IMG/VR virus record: IMGVR_UViG_3300048924_000191
Coordinates: 62,001 to 126,000 of that record
DNA length: 64,000 nt
Strand: one strand, 5' to 3'
The notes under the pieces are model-generated. The model worked only from the letters and a program-made list of their open reading frames with translations, searched no databases and was not told where the DNA came from. The position numbers and the translations under genes were made by a program. Each line of letters begins with the position of its first letter. Within the stretch, counting starts at the first letter, position 1. Shown piece after piece: positions 871-58,470 of this stretch.

Positions 871-905
871 GGTATCGATCTCTCGAAAAGTAGCGAGGGA
901 TTTCG

Positions 906-916
906 CTACATAGGAT
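906..916 (-). promoter_or_regulatory. Putative late promoter (TATG core, ATCCTATGTAG)
   Basis: TATG is the phiKZ late start motif; the identical 11-mer recurs at 2882-2892. Confidence 0.45.
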
Positions 917-922
917 TCACGG

Positions 923-958
923 CATAGAGCCCACCTGAGGGCGCAAACCCTCAGGTGG
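923..958 (-). terminator. Hairpin terminator followed by TATGCC
   Basis: CCACCTGAGGG/CCCTCAGGTGG stem just downstream of the 965-1978 stop. Confidence 0.75.
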
Positions 959-964
959 TGAAGA

Positions 965-1978
965 TTACTCTTCTTGCTTAACGCCCAGCAGACCAGCCTG
1001 CTGGCGACGCAGAGCGCGAGACTTGAGCGCTTCCATGGCCTGATACATACCGGCCAGAGCAACGTCATTCTCTTCGCAGTGCATCTCGCCTTGGTTGAAG
1101 TGCTCCAGGCGATGGATCTGTACAGCCAGCAGACTTTCGAAGGTCACGCCGGTGTGGCCGATCTGGTCAACTGGACCGGACTGGAATTGAATCAGGTTGC
1201 CGGTCTGAGGACGGATACCGCCAACGCCTTCAGTGGCGAAACCGTTGATCAGGTAGAAGTCGTACGAGTCAGGGAAGTCGGTAGGAACCATCCGACGGAC
1301 CTGGATGCTGGTATCGATACCCTCGACCTTGTGGGTCGTGATCGGCGCATCTTCCGAGAACTTCGGTGCAGGCTTACCTTCAGCCGGGAAGTCGAACAGA
1401 GTCGACAGCTCATGCTGGAAGCCGTTGGTGTGGTCAGCGATATAAACCGGCACACCGCCCTTACCTGCGTGTTCGACCATCCAGACGTTATCGATCAGGA
1501 TTTCGAACTTGTCGCCGTAGGTGTCGGTGGCGAACTTCACCAGACCGGCCTTGAGCGTTTCCAGCAGCGCAGGACGATCGAAGTCGGCCTTCAGGTCAGC
1601 TTCGGTAACCAGACGAGTCACTTCGGTTTGAAACGCAGCGAAGAATTCTTTCTCTTGCGCTTTCTCACGCTCTACGAACTCAGGGTCCAGGCGTGGATCG
1701 GCCGGTGCCGGGATGTGGTCGTAGCGCTCGGTGTCTTCGATCTCCGCTTGACTGCGGAACCAGATCGGACTATCAACGCTTACGGCAGTGCCAGCAGCAG
1801 CGTAACCGTAGGCCAGTTCACCGGTAGCTTCCAGTCTGACGAATTCATCCGGGGTGATCTGGATGAAGTACTCGACGCCAGTCTTGCGATGACGAACCTT
1901 GTCGCCGCGCGAGTACTTGCTGAGCTTCACAGGAGCTTGTGGTTCCTGGGTTTGTTCTTGCGGTTGGGCTTGTTCCAT
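965..1978 (-). CDS. Multidomain protein: N-terminal DUF1653/SH3-like domain plus C-terminal Tad1-like (signal-sponge) domain
   Basis: C-term IQFQSGP..G.TGVT.E.LL...IHRL..F..G...CEEN..AL.....A...L..R...R...GLLG follows the Tad1 pattern; N-term RGDKVRHRKTG..Y...IWFRS. Confidence 0.65.
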   Translation of the reverse strand: MEQAQPQEQTQEPQAPVKLSKYSRGDKVRHRKTGVEYFIQITPDEFVRLEATGELAYGYAAAGTAVSVDSPIWFRSQAEIEDTERYDHIPAPADPRLDPEFVEREKAQEKEFFAAFQTEVTRLVTEADLKADFDRPALLETLKAGLVKFATDTYGDKFEILIDNVWMVEHAGKGGVPVYIADHTNGFQHELSTLFDFPAEGKPAPKFSEDAPITTHKVEGIDTSIQVRRMVPTDFPDSYDFYLINGFATEGVGGIRPQTGNLIQFQSGPVDQIGHTGVTFESLLAVQIHRLEHFNQGEMHCEENDVALAGMYQAMEALKSRALRRQQAGLLGVKQEE

Positions 1979-2008: not shown

Positions 2009-2602
2009 TTAGTACGTCAGGATCAGATTGAGGGCAGTCGGACCTTCGAGCCCAGTGCCTCGAACCTTGGCTTGGCCGATCAGTTCAAGCGACTTAATCG
2101 TACCGGTAATGCTGGTAGCGAACAACGTGCCTGATAGACCAACGTCTTCCAGAACAAATTGCGGCTCGTAGAAACCTGCTTTTGGCGCGCACAACAGATG
2201 AATGATTTCTTGTAACTTGAACTCATCGCCATGCAGACACAAGATAACTGCAGGTTCACTGCCGTGTTTGTTGACCGTAGCGGAGACAATCGTCTCTTCG
2301 ATGGTTTCGATCAACAGGCGATAAGAACGAGAAGCTCCCTCAGGTTCGACGAGCGCGAACTTGTAGCGCTGCTTCTGGAGCTGACCTTCAGTCATTTCAT
2401 GAAGCGTGATCGTCTCACAGTTGGGCCGTTGCCAACCGTTGATATCCTCACCGACATGATGTCGCTCTTGAGCGAGGTCCTCGGATTCGATCTGGATCAA
2501 CTCGCCGTATTCTTCGACCAGTGCTTTCTCGATCGTGTGCATGACGTGACTCTTACCACGTCCGACAGGACCGATGACAGCCACACGGAGGTTGTTATTC
2601 AT
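2009..2602 (-). CDS. Hypothetical protein with N-terminal Walker A-like motif
   Basis: VAVIGPVGRGKS; GGTGAG RBS. Confidence 0.6.
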   Translation of the reverse strand: MNNNLRVAVIGPVGRGKSHVMHTIEKALVEEYGELIQIESEDLAQERHHVGEDINGWQRPNCETITLHEMTEGQLQKQRYKFALVEPEGASRSYRLLIETIEETIVSATVNKHGSEPAVILCLHGDEFKLQEIIHLLCAPKAGFYEPQFVLEDVGLSGTLFATSITGTIKSLELIGQAKVRGTGLEGPTALNLILTY

Positions 2603-2659
2603 GACTCACCTGCATTGAGTATTGGACATCAAATACAGGTCGGATTTAACAAGTTACAG

Positions 2660-2690
2660 CATAGAACGCCGAGGGACGTCTCCCTCGGCT
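2660..2690 (-). terminator. Hairpin terminator plus TATGC
   Basis: GCCGAGGGA/TCCCTCGGC stem, then GTTCTATGC on minus strand. Confidence 0.75.
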
Positions 2691-2888
2691 ATTGACTCTT
2701 TTATCAATACCAAAGCACCGGTGATGAGTCGATACTAAGGTCTACGCTAAACTTCCAGGAAAGCGTATCTAAGGCGGTCTTACCGCGCGTTGCTCAAATC
2801 AGGGAGCTGGACGAGCGCACTCTGCCCTTACTGTGATTCTTGCGATCTTCAAATTGTGAATGAGCTGCGGAACAACATTCTCTACATA
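2690..2888 (-). ncRNA. Candidate structured ncRNA 1 (~200 nt)
   Basis: No plausible ORF; starts at ATCCTATGTAG and ends at a terminator; stems GAATG/CATTC, GCGGT/ACCGC, TACGCT/AGCGTA, GACTC/GAGTC. Confidence 0.45.
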
Positions 2889-2923
2889 GGATATAACAAA
2901 AAAAAAGAAAGAGGCGGTGAGGC

Positions 2924-3274
2924 TCACGCCCCACCAGTCCTCGTGATCGAACAGACTCTTTCGAGCACTCGATCCATGTCCACCTGAGGTACGGATTCCT
3001 CCGTGTGTAGCAGATGGATTTTACCCTCTGTCAAAACGGACTCCGCGTTCTTTAAGCGTACATCTGCAAAGCTCTGCAGTGCGCTGTAGATAAGCGGATT
3101 CGCTACCTCGTAGTACGAGTCCAAAACAACTGCAACTGCTTCCAGATCGCCTCCGGAAGCGTGCAGGGACTGTACATGATCGACGATGCGACAATTGTGT
3201 TTACCCAGCTTAGAGAAGACATCATTCTTCTTCATCGCTGGACTCTTCTCCATCGTCATCTTCAACTCCTTCAT
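2924..3274 (-). CDS. Hypothetical protein (start uncertain, possibly 3235)
   Basis: ORF in operon orientation; followed by hairpin and T-run. Confidence 0.55.
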   Translation of the reverse strand: MKELKMTMEKSPAMKKNDVFSKLGKHNCRIVDHVQSLHASGGDLEAVAVVLDSYYEVANPLIYSALQSFADVRLKNAESVLTEGKIHLLHTEESVPQVDMDRVLERVCSITRTGGA

Positions 3275-4277: not shown

Positions 4278-4279
4278 AG

Positions 4280-4316
4280 CATACAGACCTCCTAGGACCG
4301 AAGCCCTAGGAGGTCT
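4280..4316 (-). terminator. Hairpin terminator plus GTATGC
   Basis: AGACCTCCTAGG/CCTAGGAGGTCT 12-bp stem. Confidence 0.8.
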
Positions 4317-4324
4317 ACACACCT

Positions 4325-13053: not shown

Positions 13054-13058
13054 TACAG

Positions 13059-13092
13059 CATACAGCCGGTGGGGAGACCCACCGGCTGTATG
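13059..13092. terminator. CATACAG...CTGTATG hairpin terminator
   Basis: Perfect stem after spanin genes. Confidence 0.85.
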
Positions 13093-13096
13093 TCGT

Positions 13097-30568: not shown

Positions 30569-30570
30569 GA

Positions 30571-30602
30571 CATACAGCCCGGGGTTTCCCCCGGGCTGTA
30601 TG
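30571..30602. terminator. CATACAG...CTGTATG hairpin terminator
   Basis: Perfect stem. Confidence 0.85.
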
Positions 30603-30609
30603 CTGCTAG

Positions 30610-49874: not shown

Positions 49875-50599
49875 CGCGCTGAGATCATGTTCCAGTAGTT
49901 GGCCTCAATGCCGTCACCATAAGCTCCGACGGCATAACCGTCGTTCACCTCAACGACTGCTGTCCGGCCATCGGCCAGAACGCCAAAGTCAATGACGTAA
50001 CCGGCTGGCGCTGCGTGCTTACCGGAGAGGCGTACGACTTCAGACACTACCCCAAGATCAGGCGCTATCTTTGGGTCGCCGTCGTAAAACGACAGTGCCG
50101 TATGGCGATTATGAGTGATGTAGCAGCGCCATTCAGACACGAACTCAACCACCTCGCTCATGTACACCGGACATTGACCTGAAGCGCCGTTGAAGCGAGG
50201 ATCGTAGCTGTTGTCGGCTACGAATCCAGTGAAGCGTTTGGCAGCTTCCGGTTTGATGAAGAAGCGATGACCTTTGTCGAGGAGTTCTTTCGCACCGTTC
50301 AGTCTGAACCCAGGTGTGATCTTGCGCCGGTAATAATTCGTCAAGCAAGCCGGATAAGAAGGTTCCTCGACGTTAGCCAGCTCCTTACCGTAACGCCGGA
50401 GTGCGTGTTTGATGAACGAGATACTACCCGCCACCAAGTCATACGGTCCCAACTCGACGAAACCACGTGCCACGAGCTTCTCAGTCAATTCCTCGACCTT
50501 GATGTTGTTGCGAACGGCGTAGTCTGCGAGCAGTTGTTCTTCGCGCCCGAGTTTGCCGTTACGGCGTTCCAGGACCAGTCTGACCGGTAGTCCCTGCAT
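49844..50599 (-). CDS. ATP-grasp protein, R2K/DUF4343 type
   Basis: YP..L..Y..R, FFIKP..KRFTG, SEWR, VIDFG, VEVNDGYAVGAYG, ARW. Confidence 0.8.
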   Translation of the reverse strand: MQGLPVRLVLERRNGKLGREEQLLADYAVRNNIKVEELTEKLVARGFVELGPYDLVAGSISFIKHALRRYGKELANVEEPSYPACLTNYYRRKITPGFRLNGAKELLDKGHRFFIKPEAAKRFTGFVADNSYDPRFNGASGQCPVYMSEVVEFVSEWRCYITHNRHTALSFYDGDPKIAPDLGVVSEVVRLSGKHAAPAGYVIDFGVLADGRTAVVEVNDGYAVGAYGDGIEANYWNMISARWQELIGVQW

Positions 50600-51239
50600 T
50601 GTCGGCACCTCCTGTAATTGGCTTAGATGGGGTTTTGAAGATGTCGTTAAACACCTCACTGAAGACGCCGGAGAATATCGGCGGTGTGTACTTCCGTACG
50701 AACTCCAGATAGGTGTGTGAAGGTTTGCCCAGCTGCGTACCTTCGTCTTCGATGAAGACGGTTACGGACGTGGATTTGCGCCACTCTTCATTCGGGAAGC
50801 CGAAGTCCTTAATGAAGACGTCGCATTCGTAGGGTTCGTGCACCAGAGTGACTGCCACACGCTCGACGATTTTCATTGCGTTCTCGAACACCCAAGCGCC
50901 GCCGATGAACCACACCCACTCAGTGGCGAAGGACTTGGCAAGCGTCAGAGCTGTCTTCAGATCGAAAACGTAGTGCACTTCCGCATCAGGGTATTGTTCG
51001 CGCAGCCCTTCCCAGTATTCATAGTTGCTACCAGCGATGACGATGTTAACACGACCGTCCAGAGGCTTGCCAATCGACTCGAACGTGCGGCGACCCATGA
51101 TCACAACCTGACCCATGGTCAAGGTGCGGAAGTTCTTCAGATCGCCTTTGAGTGAGTTCCACGGCAGTTTATTGCCGAGACCGATACCACCTGCTGGAGT
51201 GGCGGCTACGATCATACCCAGTTTTGGTTCAGCCATCAC
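50559..51239 (-). CDS. folA: Dihydrofolate reductase
   Basis: GIG..NKLPW, DL..FR..T, IMGRRTFESI..PL.GR.NIV, FIGGA, CDVF. Confidence 0.92.
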   Translation of the reverse strand: MMAEPKLGMIVAATPAGGIGLGNKLPWNSLKGDLKNFRTLTMGQVVIMGRRTFESIGKPLDGRVNIVIAGSNYEYWEGLREQYPDAEVHYVFDLKTALTLAKSFATEWVWFIGGAWVFENAMKIVERVAVTLVHEPYECDVFIKDFGFPNEEWRKSTSVTVFIEDEGTQLGKPSHTYLEFVRKYTPPIFSGVFSEVFNDIFKTPSKPITGGADNAGTTGQTGPGTP

Positions 51240-51535
51240 TCAAGCTCCCGCAGAATGTAACGTTGACCAGATTTGAGCAACGGCAGCTCAATAGCAACTT
51301 CATTGAGTTTAACTTTGCCGGTCAAAGGCAGACCACCGATACTACCTTTCTCGAGATCCGACAACTCATGAACAGAGACGACGGTGGTCGGCTTTGTCGG
51401 GTGTTTGGTCGCTTCGACGCACCCTGGGAGAGCTTTCAGTCCAGCACAAACGCCGTCTGAGTCACGCCATTCGCTGGGGTCGTAGGTGGATTCCATCTCG
51501 ATGTAGATGCCGTAGAACTTCGAATTATCGCTCAT
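51236..51535 (-). CDS. Hypothetical protein
   Basis: Coupled start/stop. Confidence 0.65.
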   Translation of the reverse strand: MSDNSKFYGIYIEMESTYDPSEWRDSDGVCAGLKALPGCVEATKHPTKPTTVVSVHELSDLEKGSIGGLPLTGKVKLNEVAIELPLLKSGQRYILRELE

Positions 51536-52089
51536 GCTCTTCTCCTAGACTGTAGTGGTATTACATTTGCTGGTCTGACAATCTCGATTTCTTCTGGGAG
51601 ATACGCCCAGTAGCGGTTCCACTCGATTACCAGAATGAAATCAATCATCTTCGATCCGGTATTCAGTCCAGATCCGAAATTGAAGGCCGCGTTGACGCCG
51701 CGGACTTCCCGTGAAAGGTTTTTGATTTCCTTTAGTGCCGGACAGTCTGGGAATCGAACGAAGTAGAAGTCGTCCGACGATAGTCGTTTACGTGCAGCAA
51801 AGGACGTCAGGAGATAACGGCTGTTCTCCTCTCCCTCTCGGATACGGGTTACTTCCAGCACGTCGTGGAAGTCGTGGAACGACACCGCATAGTCAGAATG
51901 ACGAAGGTACAGGTGTTTGTCGGAGTATCCAACGATCAGTCCTGTAAACTCCTCGCCATTGTCTCGGATGACTTTGGCTTTGTGTGTCGCTGCGTTGTCT
52001 TTGACGATCTGCTCGTAGATCGCTTTGAATTCGCGGTATTGCTGACGACGAAACAAACGATTGACCATACGTCTAAAAAAGGTTTTCAT
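51532..52089 (-). CDS. Hypothetical protein with Sm/LSm-like motif, paralogue A
   Basis: NGEEFTGLIVGYSDKHLYLR. Confidence 0.6.
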   Translation of the reverse strand: MKTFFRRMVNRLFRRQQYREFKAIYEQIVKDNAATHKAKVIRDNGEEFTGLIVGYSDKHLYLRHSDYAVSFHDFHDVLEVTRIREGEENSRYLLTSFAARKRLSSDDFYFVRFPDCPALKEIKNLSREVRGVNAAFNFGSGLNTGSKMIDFILVIEWNRYWAYLPEEIEIVRPANVIPLQSRRRA

Positions 52090-52604
52090 ACTTCCTCCAG
52101 CTCCCTGCCGAACCAGGCGGTGAATTGATTTCTTGTCGAGGCATCCACAAACATCGTAAGCAGTCTGGGAATTTCCTCGCTGCGCCTGAACTTGAACAGT
52201 CGATTGGCCTCACGGCTAGCGGCGCTGTTGTGGATGATGAACGGCGCCAGATTCGTTGGGTTTTCACGTGGTGCAACTCTGTAGGTCGCGTGGTGCGAAA
52301 ACCCATAGACACTCAGTTTATCTAACGCCCTTACGTAAATTGTCTTTTGATGTTCTTTGGTCAACGTCACGAACGACAGTTCGGACTTTGGGAACTTCTG
52401 GATGGAGCGATCGTCACGACGGACATAGAGGCTATCAGAATCGTATCCCACCAATACCGCAGCGAGTCTACCTTCCCCTTTCGACGCGATGCATGCAGTG
52501 TACTCAGGGACATCTTCTTTGATGTAGGACTCCAACCACGCATCTAGTCTTCGGAACTTTCTCTTGGCGCGCCATCGCCTGAACTTACCCAGTAAGGTGA
52601 GCAT
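52086..52604 (-). CDS. Hypothetical protein with Sm/LSm-like motif, paralogue B
   Basis: LAAVLVGYDSDSLYVR. Confidence 0.6.
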   Translation of the reverse strand: MLTLLGKFRRWRAKRKFRRLDAWLESYIKEDVPEYTACIASKGEGRLAAVLVGYDSDSLYVRRDDRSIQKFPKSELSFVTLTKEHQKTIYVRALDKLSVYGFSHHATYRVAPRENPTNLAPFIIHNSAASREANRLFKFRRSEEIPRLLTMFVDASTRNQFTAWFGRELEEV

Positions 52605-52634
52605 AGACTTCCCCTGTAATTTAGGTTATTACGA

Positions 52635-52666
52635 CATACAGCGCGGGGATGTCCCCGCGCTGTATG
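52635..52666. terminator. CATACAG...CTGTATG hairpin terminator
   Basis: Perfect stem. Confidence 0.85.
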
Positions 52667-52894
52667 CTACTTCATGTGCGGTTGTTCGAAGAACGTCTTC
52701 ACGGCATGGTCTACGCCTTGCTGTTCGTAAGACTTGCCTTCTTTCGGCGGACGACCTTCCAATTTACGCCATTCTTTATCCAGATGATCGAGATGTTTGT
52801 TCAACTCGATGAACTCTTTCTTCCGATAAAGTTCCAGACCGTGAGAACCTGGCACCAGCCAAATGTCGCCGTACTTCACTGCGTCTCGGTACAT
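52667..52894 (-). CDS. Hypothetical protein
   Basis: AAGGGG RBS. Confidence 0.6.
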   Translation of the reverse strand: MYRDAVKYGDIWLVPGSHGLELYRKKEFIELNKHLDHLDKEWRKLEGRPPKEGKSYEQQGVDHAVKTFFEQPHMK

Positions 52895-53685: not shown

Positions 53686-55296
53686 TCAAACGGCGATAGG
53701 GATGTGAATGTCCTTACCTGGGATGTAGCCATAGACCTCGACGCCGTCAGCGGTGATATCGTCGATGTTGGTGAATTGCTGCTTGAAGCGAATGCGTGGA
53801 TCACACTCGACGTCAGAACCGCAGTCCAACATCTCTTCCATCGCCTCCACCTGGTTGGCGTAGACGTGAGCATCCACACCTAGGGTCACCAGCTCGTCGG
53901 CTTCCATGTTTACGACATGGGCAATCGAGTGTAGCAGGTAGGCGTACTGGATGACGTTGAAAACTGCGCCAGCAGGGACGTCATTACTGCGCAGCAACAC
54001 GAAGCCGGAGATCGCCCGAGTCGGCAGGTTGTTGGCCTTGATGTACTCGAGGATCTTTTCCTTGGCTGTTTCTTTGTCGGAGAAGAGATCTTCGTTCAGA
54101 CGACCTTCCGCGTCTCGGTGCGTGTTGAGATACGCTTGGAACAGACCGCGGTTCTCGAGCATACCTTCGAGCTCCGAGAAGTCCATTTCCCACGACACCA
54201 CCTGGAAGTACAGATGGCAGGGCGGGAGAGCTGCTTGCCAGATACGTCCTGGGTTCCAGGCGATCATGAGCATGCGGCGATCGTCAGGGTTGGTTTTGAG
54301 CGCATTGACGATGTTCTGCAGTTGGTCGATCTCGCGGTGCATGACCATACGGCCGCTGTCCCAACCGATACCTTCCTGGAGCACACCAAGGTTTTCGTAA
54401 CCTTGATCGCGGTAAGCTTGCACCAGAGCCAGATCACTGCCATTCACCAGTTGTGTGTCTTGCCACTTCCGCCACTGGACACCGTAGCTACCTTCACCGA
54501 TGGAAGCATCGAGCAATCGGTACTTCGGCACTTCAAGCTGATCGAGGATGTGAACCACCGTCGATACCTTCTCAGGATCGATGAAGTGTTCTTCGAAGTC
54601 TTGCGCCTCCGGGTTCCAGACCGTGACCTTGACCGGGTTCTCCTCCGCAAACATCGCGGCAGCTTCGATGATGCGCGGATAGATGATGTTCCATTTCACG
54701 CCGTTGTTCTTCGATACGCGGGAGAGTCGCTTCTTGAGCGAGACTTCCTCACCACCACCGACCTTGACTTCGGTAGGTACGCCGAATTTGTCCAGGGCGG
54801 TGTGGAGCATTTCGATACCGGTTTGGGTAACGTTGTTCCACTCGAACTGTTCGCCACCCAGCGTGAAGACGAAGTGAGTCGAACCGATCATCGACTTCGA
54901 ACTCTCGTACATGTCGATAAGTGCACGGATGTTGCGGACCTGCTCAGGATCGGTCAGGTAACCAACGCGGTCTTCGAGACGCACTTTCTCGAAGCGTGGG
55001 ACGTCGTACACCGCAGTGCCTGGAATGAACCAGCTGTCCCAGATACCGATCTTGCGATCGCACAGTGGTTTGATCGACGGATTGCCGGTCTTGAACATGT
55101 CCATCTCAACGAGACTGTTCATGTAGCGAACCAGGCGGGTGGACAGGATCGGCATACGCAGGCCGCCGAGAGAGAAGCGCATCATTTGCGCAAACAGCAT
55201 GTGGGTGCCGTGACCGGTACGCGACGACTTCCAGTGGCCGTAGTTCATGACCGCTGCGGTCAGTTGATGCAGTTGCGAATCAGCAGGGTTCAGCAT
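53686..55296 (-). CDS. thyA: Thymidylate synthase with large insertions
   Basis: RTG.GT, IWDSW, YGVQWR.W, DQL, NPDDRR, AWNP, ALPPCH, RSND, FN, DAHVY. Confidence 0.92.
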   Translation of the reverse strand: MLNPADSQLHQLTAAVMNYGHWKSSRTGHGTHMLFAQMMRFSLGGLRMPILSTRLVRYMNSLVEMDMFKTGNPSIKPLCDRKIGIWDSWFIPGTAVYDVPRFEKVRLEDRVGYLTDPEQVRNIRALIDMYESSKSMIGSTHFVFTLGGEQFEWNNVTQTGIEMLHTALDKFGVPTEVKVGGGEEVSLKKRLSRVSKNNGVKWNIIYPRIIEAAAMFAEENPVKVTVWNPEAQDFEEHFIDPEKVSTVVHILDQLEVPKYRLLDASIGEGSYGVQWRKWQDTQLVNGSDLALVQAYRDQGYENLGVLQEGIGWDSGRMVMHREIDQLQNIVNALKTNPDDRRMLMIAWNPGRIWQAALPPCHLYFQVVSWEMDFSELEGMLENRGLFQAYLNTHRDAEGRLNEDLFSDKETAKEKILEYIKANNLPTRAISGFVLLRSNDVPAGAVFNVIQYAYLLHSIAHVVNMEADELVTLGVDAHVYANQVEAMEEMLDCGSDVECDPRIRFKQQFTNIDDITADGVEVYGYIPGKDIHIPIAV

Positions 55297-58430: not shown

Positions 58431-58432
58431 AG

Positions 58433-58464
58433 CATACAGCCGGGGCGTTTGCCCCGGCTGTATG
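58433..58464. terminator. CATACAG...CTGTATG hairpin terminator
   Basis: Stem identical to 298-330, loop differs. Confidence 0.85.
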
Positions 58465-58470
58465 TCGTGA

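What the first reader, a model, noticed from the sequence alone, without database searches (positions are those of the whole stretch)
2690..2892. Candidate late ncRNA 1 sharing an 11-nt start motif with a virion gene
Seen: a ~200-nt stretch without a plausible ORF between two terminators. ATCCTATGTAG at its minus-strand 5' end is identical to the motif upstream of the virion gene (906-916), and several short stems are present. Established: phiKZ late transcripts start at TATG. Inference: an independent late non-coding transcript.
Basis: partly seen in the sequence, partly recalled or inferred. Interest (0 to 1): 0.6.

Follow-up and report, generated by a model that had tools for sequence, protein, structure and literature searches.

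The report
Conserved structured RNA in jumbo phage
The gene-free 320-base gap holds a roughly 220-base folded RNA element that an uncultivated group of phiKZ-like giant phages conserves better than the neighbouring protein genes; it matches no described RNA family and its function is unknown.

Summary
ATCCTATGTAG lies at 2882-2892(-) and 906-916(-), its only two copies in the 243-kb phage genome. No ORF with a start codon fits inside the stretch. A hairpin plus T-run terminator lies upstream and a GC hairpin downstream.

The window comes from a phiKZ-like jumbo phage with split RNA polymerase subunits and a phiKZ-type capsid protein. Metagenomic relatives keep the same gene order and the same ~320-nt gene-free gap. 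Their flanking proteins are only 26-54% identical. The gap is 62-85% identical in DNA, against 50-70% for the flanking genes.

Five helices show compensatory changes: 98% of cells are paired, against 33-50% in slid controls, and nine pairs change on both sides. G·U pairs place the RNA on the gene strand. Indels of 1-2 nt and an in-frame stop rule out coding. Rfam and ARAGORN find nothing.

A TATG after the upstream terminator is conserved in all relatives, but the rest of the 11-mer is not. Its identity with the virion-gene site is near chance. No RNA data exist, so "independent" and "late" remain inferences.

Verdict: a real, new structured non-coding RNA family, most likely a separate small RNA gene. 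A leader of the downstream P-loop gene is the main rival.

The parts
2915..2936 (-). Hairpin of the intrinsic terminator of the upstream 116-aa gene (2924-3274)
   Evidence: Terminator scan, 9 pairs with 6 GC. The hairpin is conserved with compensatory changes in relatives.
2897..2914 (-). T-rich tail of that terminator, including nine consecutive T
   Evidence: A run of 7-9 T is present in all relatives.
2882..2892 (-).
   Evidence: Exact match and only two copies in the genome. The flanks of TATG are not conserved in relatives.
2885..2888 (-). TATG, the putative promoter core. G at 2885 is the inferred +1.
   Evidence: Conserved in all 8 full-length relatives, 8-22 nt after the T-run. The +1 position is taken by analogy with phiKZ (PMC4666361).
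2665..2885 (-). Inferred ~220-nt structured non-coding RNA. The ends are inferred, not mapped.
   Evidence: Covariance model matches of 157-235 bits in 10 distinct relatives and a single copy in this genome. Covariation; higher conservation than the flanking genes.
2847..2865 (-). Conserved 5' leader segment (G-Y-U-C-W-U-U-Y-A-C-A-A...)
   Evidence: Alignments A3 and A6. The proposed closing helix with AAGAGUC at about 2696-2702 is not supported in two relatives (my reading).
2792..2843 (-). P2: long irregular hairpin holding the near-invariant blocks UCA(A/C)AGUAAGG (2826-2836) and CCAGCUCCCUG (2800-2810)
   Evidence: The outer G-C/C-G pairs covary in L026.
2809..2827 (-). H1: the apical helix of P2
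   Evidence: 3 of its 5 pairs change on both sides.
2774..2786 (-). H2: GCGG/CCGC stem with an invariant UAAGA loop
   Evidence: The helix is invariant, so it says nothing for or against pairing.
2743..2767 (-). H3: stem with a near-invariant 13-nt loop (UUUCCUGGAAGUUU)
   Evidence: The stem reads ACGCU/AGCGU, CCGCU/AGCGG, CCGCC/GGCGG or ACGCU/GGCGU in different relatives.
2710..2740 (-). H4: stem with a near-invariant loop ACUCAUCAC
   Evidence: 4 pairs change on both sides.
2668..2689 (-). H5: 9-bp GC hairpin, the likely 3' end or terminator of the RNA. It has no U-run.
   Evidence: Two pairs covary. It belongs to the same class as the hairpin-plus-TATG modules at many gene boundaries.
2660..2663 (-). 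TATG of the motif TATGCTGTAAC, the likely promoter of the downstream 197-aa gene
   Evidence: Invariant in relatives. The same motif lies after hairpins upstream of genes at window 4283 and 13062.
2603..2659 (-). Strongly conserved 5' UTR of the 197-aa P-loop gene (2009-2602)
   Evidence: Alignment A3.
906..916 (-). Second copy of the 11-mer, upstream of the DUF7941 virion gene (346-870)
   Evidence: It lies 14 nt after a hairpin-adjacent TATGCCGT and directly before a covarying 5' hairpin.

Best explanation
The gap holds a small gene for a structured non-coding RNA of about 220 nt on the minus strand.

Shown here:
- The sequence is under stronger purifying selection than the flanking protein genes.
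- It folds into four internal hairpins (P2/H1, H2, H3, H4) plus a terminal GC hairpin (H5). The stems covary, while the loops and linkers are almost invariant.
- G·U pairs put the RNA on the same strand as the genes.

Inferred:
- The phage's own multisubunit RNA polymerase starts at the G of the conserved TATG (2885), just after the upstream intrinsic terminator.
- It stops at H5 (about 2665-2668).
- The next gene then has its own hairpin-adjacent TATGCTGTAAC start.

Conserved loops with covarying stems are the pattern of RNAs that fold into a defined shape and are recognised by a partner. I therefore take it to act in trans as a folded RNA, most likely bound by a phage or host protein, rather than as a simple antisense RNA. 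The partner and the effect are unknown.
For: Phage type: split RNA polymerase beta subunits and a phiKZ-type major head protein. The record is a complete 243-kb virus genome.

Synteny and gap: the order 284 aa, 50 aa, 110 aa, ~320-nt gap, 197 aa, 337 aa, DUF7941 is kept on every contig long enough to show it, from at least 6 samples.

Conservation: the element is 62-85% identical in DNA in every pair of relatives. The flanking genes are 50-70% identical in DNA and 26-63% in protein, apart from the closest pair at 77% and 73%.

Structure:
- 31 pairs in 5 helices, with 98.3% of cells paired against 33-50% when partners are slid.
- 9 pairs change on both sides, against 1-3 in the slid controls.
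- 0 of 500 shuffles reach the observed values.

Strand: 15 G·U cells on the gene strand against 2 on the other.

Copy number: one per genome.

Boundaries: the upstream hairpin plus T-run and a TATG 8-22 nt later are conserved in all relatives. A second TATG follows 209-225 nt downstream, directly after H5. Hairpin plus TATG[CT][CT]GT recurs at many gene boundaries. A T-run terminator followed by TATG 29 nt before a gene start occurs at window 5023.

Literature: the phiKZ late promoter is TATG with G as +1 (PMC4666361). Small RNAs bounded by a start site and a nearby terminator were mapped in phiKZ-like phage 201phi2-1 (PMC11512511).
Against: There are no RNA data, and no listed sequencing run holding the region is on record as RNA. 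The 5' end, the 3' end, the abundance and the timing are therefore all unmeasured.

H5 has no U-run, so termination there is assumed from its likeness to other gene-end hairpins in this genome. Read-through into the 197-aa gene would make the element a long 5' leader.

The element always sits directly upstream of that gene, and the 60-nt UTR after H5 is also conserved.

Only about six to seven clearly distinct sequence types are available. They are related, so the shuffle statistics overstate independence.

No partner is identified. The neighbouring 197-aa protein is a generic P-loop protein with no informative fold match.
Confidence: 0.55

Rival explanations
1. It is a cis-acting 5' leader of the downstream 197-aa P-loop gene. 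Transcription from the upstream TATG either stops at H5 or reads through. The folded domain senses a ligand or protein and so sets expression, like a riboswitch or attenuator. A short RNA would then be only the prematurely terminated by-product.
For: The element is immediately upstream of the 197-aa gene in all relatives, and the 60-nt UTR after H5 is also conserved.

Invariant loops and junctions with covarying stems are typical of aptamers.

The invariant CUCCCU(G) can pair over 6 bp with the 5' arm of H5, which is a possible antiterminator (my reading).

In 201phi2-1, 8 of 11 small RNAs arise by premature termination in 5' UTRs (PMC11512511).
Against: H5 is followed at once by the same TATGCYGT motif that follows hairpins at many other gene boundaries. 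The downstream gene therefore seems to have its own start after the element.

No alternative pairing is supported by covariation, because the candidate segments are invariant.

No Rfam riboswitch matches.

The whole neighbourhood is syntenic, so adjacency to the gene is not specific evidence.
Confidence: 0.25
2. It is a trans-acting antisense regulator that base-pairs with the translation-initiation regions of several phage mRNAs.
For: The RNA has perfect 11-13-nt complements in the -45..+21 windows of six phage genes, giving nine 11-mer windows.

Controls give far fewer:
- 0.77 windows on average in 500 dinucleotide shuffles (0 of 500 reach 9).
- 0 for the same-sense and reversed controls.
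- About 1 site on average for real non-coding fragments, of which 1% reach 6 sites.

Six of 13 antisense matches genome-wide fall at gene starts. Several overlap a Shine-Dalgarno sequence or codons 4-7.
Against: Three of the six sites were checked in relatives and none is conserved, although the matching RNA segments are invariant or known:
- the SD site of window 51532-52089;
- the site upstream of the DHFR gene, in a contig from the same sample as relative L026;
- the 5' UTR site of the phiKZ_IP-family gene.

Several of the matching RNA segments lie inside helices. Genome-wide the number of 11-mer matches is at chance, 30 against about 24.5 expected.
Confidence: 0.07
3. It is a DNA-level element, such as a replication or packaging signal or a protein-binding cruciform, and not an RNA.
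For: The sequence is highly conserved and has several inverted repeats. It is single-copy.
Against: Pairing uses 15 G·U cells that would be A·C mismatches on the other strand. That fits a single-stranded transcript of the gene strand, not a symmetric cruciform. The element is framed by terminator-like and promoter-like signals in the gene orientation.
Confidence: 0.05
4. It is a small protein-coding gene or its remnant.
For: One relative (L023/L024) has a 69-codon ORF across the element, and a gene caller called it in L024. A frame reading ...SSSL..AP(C/R)GKTA is open over about 17 codons in several relatives.
Against: In the window and L017 that frame has no start codon and an in-frame UGA. 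Start codons are not positionally conserved. Indels of 1 and 2 nt shift the frame between relatives. Substitutions keep base pairs, not codons.
Confidence: 0.03

Closest known systems
Small RNAs of phiKZ-like phages mapped by ONT-cappable-seq (201phi2-1 sRNA005 and the phiKZ small RNA upstream of gp182; PMC11512511, PMC10914365)
   Same: Both are short non-coding units in genomes of phages with their own multisubunit RNA polymerases. Both are delimited by a start site and a nearby terminator, have a conserved predicted fold, and have no known function.
   Different: Those RNAs were found as transcripts, and the conserved one sits upstream of a tail gene. This element is known only from sequence and lies upstream of a P-loop gene. 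It has a multi-hairpin fold with covariation support. Its covariance model finds nothing in phiKZ or in three other jumbo phages.
Riboswitch or attenuator leaders
   Same: A folded domain with invariant junctions and loops lies directly upstream of a gene and ends in a strong hairpin.
   Different: No Rfam aptamer matches. The hairpin has no U-run. It is followed by a promoter-like TATG motif that this genome uses at other gene boundaries. No alternative pairing is supported.
phi29 packaging RNA (pRNA)
   Same: A phage-encoded, structured, single-copy RNA of similar size that works as a folded RNA bound by phage proteins (from my own knowledge).
   Different: pRNA belongs to small Bacillus podophages and sits near a genome end. 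Nothing here links the element to packaging. This is a resemblance in kind only and was not tested.
phiKZ late promoter (TATG, G = +1; PMC4666361)
   Same: A TATG is conserved at the inferred 5' end, and the phage has homologous polymerase subunits.
   Different: In this genome most hairpin-adjacent TATG sites extend to TATG[CT][CT]GT. They also occur on both sides of palindromes between convergent genes. The element's own TATG is followed by a pyrimidine then a purine. Its activity and timing are untested.

Membership tests
Structured non-coding RNA (general criterion) | Base pairs are kept through compensatory changes across homologues, above controls | tested here: met
   98.3% of cells paired against 33-50% when partners are slid. 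Nine pairs change on both sides against 1-3. 0 of 500 shuffles reach the observed values.
Structured non-coding RNA (general criterion) | No conserved reading frame | tested here: met
   an in-frame stop and no start codon in the window, indels that shift the frame, and start codons that are not conserved in position.
Any Rfam 15 family | Covariance-model score at or above the gathering threshold | tested here: not met
   nothing in the element for the window, and only low-score noise (at most 23 bits) for L020 and L026.
tRNA / tmRNA | Cloverleaf or tmRNA detected by ARAGORN | tested here: not met
   no gene found in 2400-3100.
phiKZ-type TATG promoter | TATG at the start point, conserved in relatives | tested here: met
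   a TATG lies 8-22 nt after the T-run in all 8 full-length relatives.
phiKZ-type TATG promoter | The phage encodes the phiKZ-type non-virion multisubunit RNA polymerase | tested here: met
   phrog_3295 and phrog_3015 RNA polymerase beta-subunit families at E 1e-150 to 1e-163. The virion and non-virion polymerase sets were not told apart.
phiKZ-type TATG promoter | Transcription starts at the G, late in infection | not testable with these tools
   No RNA run holds the sequence.
Intrinsic terminator (upstream, 2897-2936) | GC-rich hairpin followed by a U-run | tested here: met
   Conserved in relatives.
Intrinsic terminator (downstream, H5 2668-2689) | GC-rich hairpin followed by a U-run | tested here: not met
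   The hairpin is present, but its tail reads GUUCUAUGCUGU with no U-run. The scan did not report it.
phiKZ / 201phi2-1 conserved small RNA upstream of the gp182-type tail gene | Sequence and structure similarity, and position upstream of the tail gene | tested here: not met
   Model R2 finds no match in phiKZ. The element lies upstream of a P-loop gene.
Riboswitch / attenuator | Mutually exclusive terminator and antiterminator pairings | tested here: inconclusive
   A 6-bp alternative between CUCCCU and the 5' arm of H5 is possible, but the segment is invariant, so no covariation test is possible.
Base-pairing small RNA | Complementarity to targets is conserved in relatives | tested here: not met
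   Three of six predicted sites are not conserved. The other three could not be fetched.

The most novel reading that the evidence does not exclude
The element is a new class of functional RNA specific to a lineage of phiKZ-like phages, the kind that builds a nucleus-like compartment. It could be a ligand- or protein-sensing switch read by the phage's own RNA polymerase. It could instead be a hub RNA that contacts the start regions of several phage mRNAs; the unexplained excess of 11-13-nt complementarities would then be real but evolving fast.
Probability: 0.12. Interest if true: 0.8.

Novelty: new member of a known kind. Interest (0 to 1): 0.6.

Why it matters
Giant phiKZ-like phages transcribe their genes with their own polymerases. 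Their small RNAs have been seen in transcriptomes, but none has a known function (PMC11512511; PMC13282480).

This element is a candidate with unusually good comparative support:
- It is better conserved than its neighbouring genes.
- It has a defined multi-hairpin fold and invariant loops that mark likely contact surfaces.

That gives a concrete object for pull-downs, structure probing and deletion in a cultured relative. It also adds a family that current RNA libraries lack. Gene callers can miscall it as a small ORF, as happened in one relative.

Tried and rejected
- **Near and distant DNA searches of the phage collection.** The locus gave no match. The flanking proteins have no useful relatives among isolated phages.
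- **Pattern scans.** IMG/VR returned only a near-identical contig. The JGI metagenome scan returned one near-identical contig and one chance match, L029.
- **Covariance model R2 against other jumbo phages.** Searches of pPa_SNUABM_DT01, LucasX, RTH11 and phiKZ gave only a 20.5-bit match spread over 91 nt. I take this as hairpin noise, like the terminator hits in the phage's own genome.
- **RNA evidence.** No listed run holding the region is on record as RNA, and the one holder is kept as contigs. I therefore did not use read laying.
- **A closing helix** between GCUCUUU (leader) and AAGAGUC (linker). Two alternative partners are possible, and changes in L032 and L026 break it. I dropped it.
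- **A helix between the leader UUACA and UGUAA after H5.** It has 5 bp and no covariation. Not adopted.
- **Pairing of the H4 loop or the linker with the downstream RBS or UTR.** Not conserved, by inspection.
- **Multi-target antisense idea.** There is a statistical excess in this genome, but 3 of 3 checked sites are not conserved.
- **Csr/Rsm-type sponge.** Only two conserved GGA motifs (my reading). Not pursued.
- **Function from the neighbouring 197-aa protein.** It has a P-loop only. The AlphaFold model (pLDDT 74) has no fold match at E 0.001 or better.

Full report
**Where the window lies.** The window is bases 62001-126000 of a 243,378-bp virus record with direct terminal repeats, rated complete. 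GC content is 54%. The genome encodes two proteins of the phiKZ-type split RNA polymerase beta-subunit families (E 1e-150 to 1e-163) and a 776-aa major head protein of the phiKZ type. The closest isolated phage by head protein is Pseudomonas phage pPa_SNUABM_DT01, at only 34.5% identity. This is therefore a distant, uncultivated relative of the phiKZ-like jumbo phages. Genes around the finding lie on the minus strand.

**The observation.** The 11-mer ATCCTATGTAG is exact at 2882-2892(-) and 906-916(-), and these are its only two copies in the genome.
- No frame of 20 aa or more with a start codon lies inside 2690-2892.
- Upstream is a 9-bp hairpin (2936-2915) followed by nine T.
- Downstream is a 9-bp GC hairpin (2689-2668) with no T-run, followed by TATGCTGT.

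The 11-mer identity is weak evidence on its own. The genome has 167 non-coding TATG sites, so about 0.85 pairs are expected to share all seven flanking bases (my arithmetic).

**Relatives.** The downstream 197-aa protein has homologues of 41-89% identity in metagenome assemblies. Their contigs were fetched. One more came through the upstream 116-aa protein.
- Every contig long enough to show it keeps the same gene order: 284 aa, 50 aa, 110 aa, a gene-free gap of about 320 nt, 197 aa, 337 aa, then a DUF7941 virion protein.
- The gap aligns well, with long invariant blocks.
- From the TATG to the end of the terminal hairpin, the element is 62-85% identical in DNA for every pair. The three flanking genes are 50-70% identical in DNA and 26-63% in protein, apart from the closest pair at 77% and 73%.
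- A covariance model finds the element once per genome, at 157-235 bits in relatives. Elsewhere it picks up only terminator hairpins.

**Structure.** RNAalifold and my inspection give four internal hairpins and a terminal one.
- P2 (2843-2792) is a long irregular hairpin with an apical helix H1 (2827-2809). It carries two near-invariant blocks, UCA(A/C)AGUAAGG and CCAGCUCCCUG.
- H2 (2786-2774) has an invariant UAAGA loop.
- H3 (2767-2743) has a near-invariant 13-nt loop.
- H4 (2740-2710) has the loop ACUCAUCAC.
- H5 (2689-2668) is the terminal GC hairpin.

The pair counts were made on a MAFFT alignment that was not fitted to any structure.
- 31 pairs are 98.3% paired, against 33-50% when the partners are slid by 1-3 columns.
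- Nine pairs change on both sides, against 1-3 in the slid controls.
- No shuffle out of 500 reaches the observed values.
- H1, H4 and H5 carry the double changes. H3 switches between ACGCU/AGCGU, CCGCU/AGCGG and CCGCC/GGCGG.

Fifteen cells are G·U on the gene strand, against two on the other strand. The folded molecule is therefore a transcript of the gene strand. Stems vary while loops and linkers are fixed, which suggests a defined three-dimensional shape with recognised surfaces.

**Not coding.**
- In the window and L017, the only frame with partial conservation has no start codon and an in-frame UGA.
- Start codons in other relatives sit at different places.
- Indels of 1 and 2 nt shift the frame between relatives.
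- The 69-codon ORF in L023/L024, which a gene caller called in L024, is not open elsewhere.

**Not a known RNA.** Rfam 15 gives nothing for the window copy and only low-score noise for two divergent copies. ARAGORN finds no tRNA or tmRNA. The model finds no homologue in phiKZ, pPa_SNUABM_DT01, LucasX or RTH11.

**Transcription signals.** In phiKZ the late promoter core is TATG, with the G as the start point (PMC4666361).
- TATG-containing hexamers are enriched in this genome's intergenic DNA. In gaps between same-strand genes, TATG is biased to the sense strand, 67 against 38.
- Every relative has the upstream hairpin, a run of 7-9 T, and a TATG 8-22 nt later.
- A second TATG follows 209-225 nt downstream, directly after H5.
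- The flanks of the first TATG differ: CCTATGTAG, CTTATGTTATGCAG, TTATATGCGTAG.
- The second TATG is part of an invariant TATGC(T/C)GTAA motif. The same motif follows hairpins upstream of other genes, at window 4283 and 13062.
- A T-run terminator followed by TATG 29 nt before a gene start occurs at window 5023.

The simplest reading is a terminator, a start, a 220-nt RNA, a boundary hairpin, and then the next gene's own start. None of this is measured, because no listed run holding the region is on record as RNA. Since TATG precedes many kinds of gene here, "late" is not established.

**The virion-gene copy of the 11-mer.** Upstream of gene 346-870 there are two conserved TATGs.
- One adjoins the hairpin (TATGCCGT).
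It is followed directly by a small hairpin that covaries in relatives, which fits an mRNA 5' end at that site.
- The bases before this TATG are not conserved: ATCC, GATGC, ATTG.
- A relative's head-protein gene has ATCCTATG in the same two-TATG arrangement. A short extended motif may therefore exist in this clade, but it is not general.

**Function.** Three leads were followed.

The neighbouring 197-aa protein has only a P-loop, and its model has no informative fold match.

A search for base-pairing targets gave an unexpected excess.
- The RNA has perfect 11-13-nt complements in the -45..+21 windows of six phage genes.
- Shuffles give 0.77 windows on average (0 of 500 reach 9). Same-sense and reversed controls give none. 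Real fragments of the genome give about one site on average.
- The three sites that could be checked in relatives are not conserved, although the matching RNA segments are invariant.
- I therefore do not adopt this mechanism and leave the excess unexplained.

A riboswitch-like leader remains the main rival. The element always precedes the same gene, and an alternative 6-bp pairing with H5 is possible. But the gene appears to have its own start after H5, and no alternative pairing can be tested.

**Comparison and verdict.** Small RNAs bounded by a start site and a nearby terminator have been mapped in 201phi2-1 and phiKZ. None has a known function (PMC11512511; PMC13282480). This element is of that kind but belongs to no described family.

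I rate the existence of a conserved, structured, non-coding element on the gene strand at about 0.9. I rate the reading as an independent RNA gene at 0.55 and a cis-acting leader at 0.25. The antisense-regulator, DNA-element and coding readings share most of the rest.

Noticed in passing
genome-wide; in the window e.g. 298-330, 931-958, 4278-4323, 13058-13093, 30570-30603, 52634-52667, 58432-58465: GC-rich hairpins are followed directly by TATG[CT][CT]GT. Between convergent genes the palindrome often carries CATA...TATG on both sides, and 16 of 22 convergent gaps have at least one such TATG. TATG may therefore be part of a terminator module as well as a promoter core in this phage.
   Followed up: partly
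window 871-930 (-): The 5' region of the DUF7941 virion gene has two conserved TATGs 14 nt apart. A small hairpin (loop AAUCCC) starts right after the second one and covaries in relatives, which suggests a structured mRNA 5' end.
   Followed up: partly
window 61031 (+) and 13042 (-); genome 217655, 218005, 239645 (+): A motif of about 40 nt recurs: TTGATTCA, 7-9 nt, then CTATGT(A/G)TCAT. It may be another promoter class or a binding site.
   Followed up: no
whole genome, intergenic DNA: CCTAGG and TCCTAG are enriched in intergenic DNA. They often form the stems of boundary hairpins, for example at window 4285-4316.
   Followed up: no
window 965-1978 (-): The last ~80 residues of this 337-aa protein match phrog_2428. 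Homologues carry a faint Acb2/Tad1-hairpin Pfam hit, and one phage record calls its relative an 'immune evasion protein'. It may be a sponge-like anti-defence domain next to the RNA locus.
   Followed up: no
window 50559-52130 and genome 130038-130529, 138390-139556, 193473-193982, 195398-195928: There is an unexplained excess of perfect 11-13-nt complementarity between the RNA and the start regions of six phage genes. It is significant against shuffles and real-fragment controls, but not conserved at the three sites checked.
   Followed up: partly
window 2603-2659 (-): The 5' UTR of the 197-aa gene is itself strongly conserved (for example UAUUUGAUGUCCAAU), more than expected for a plain spacer.
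   Followed up: no
L024 2739-2948: A public gene call places a 69-aa ORF across the RNA element in one relative. The frame is not open in other relatives, which shows how this element can be mis-annotated.
   Followed up: yes
window 53686-55296 (-): The thymidylate synthase is 536 aa. The family match starts only at about residue 224, so there is a long unassigned N-terminal part.
   Followed up: no
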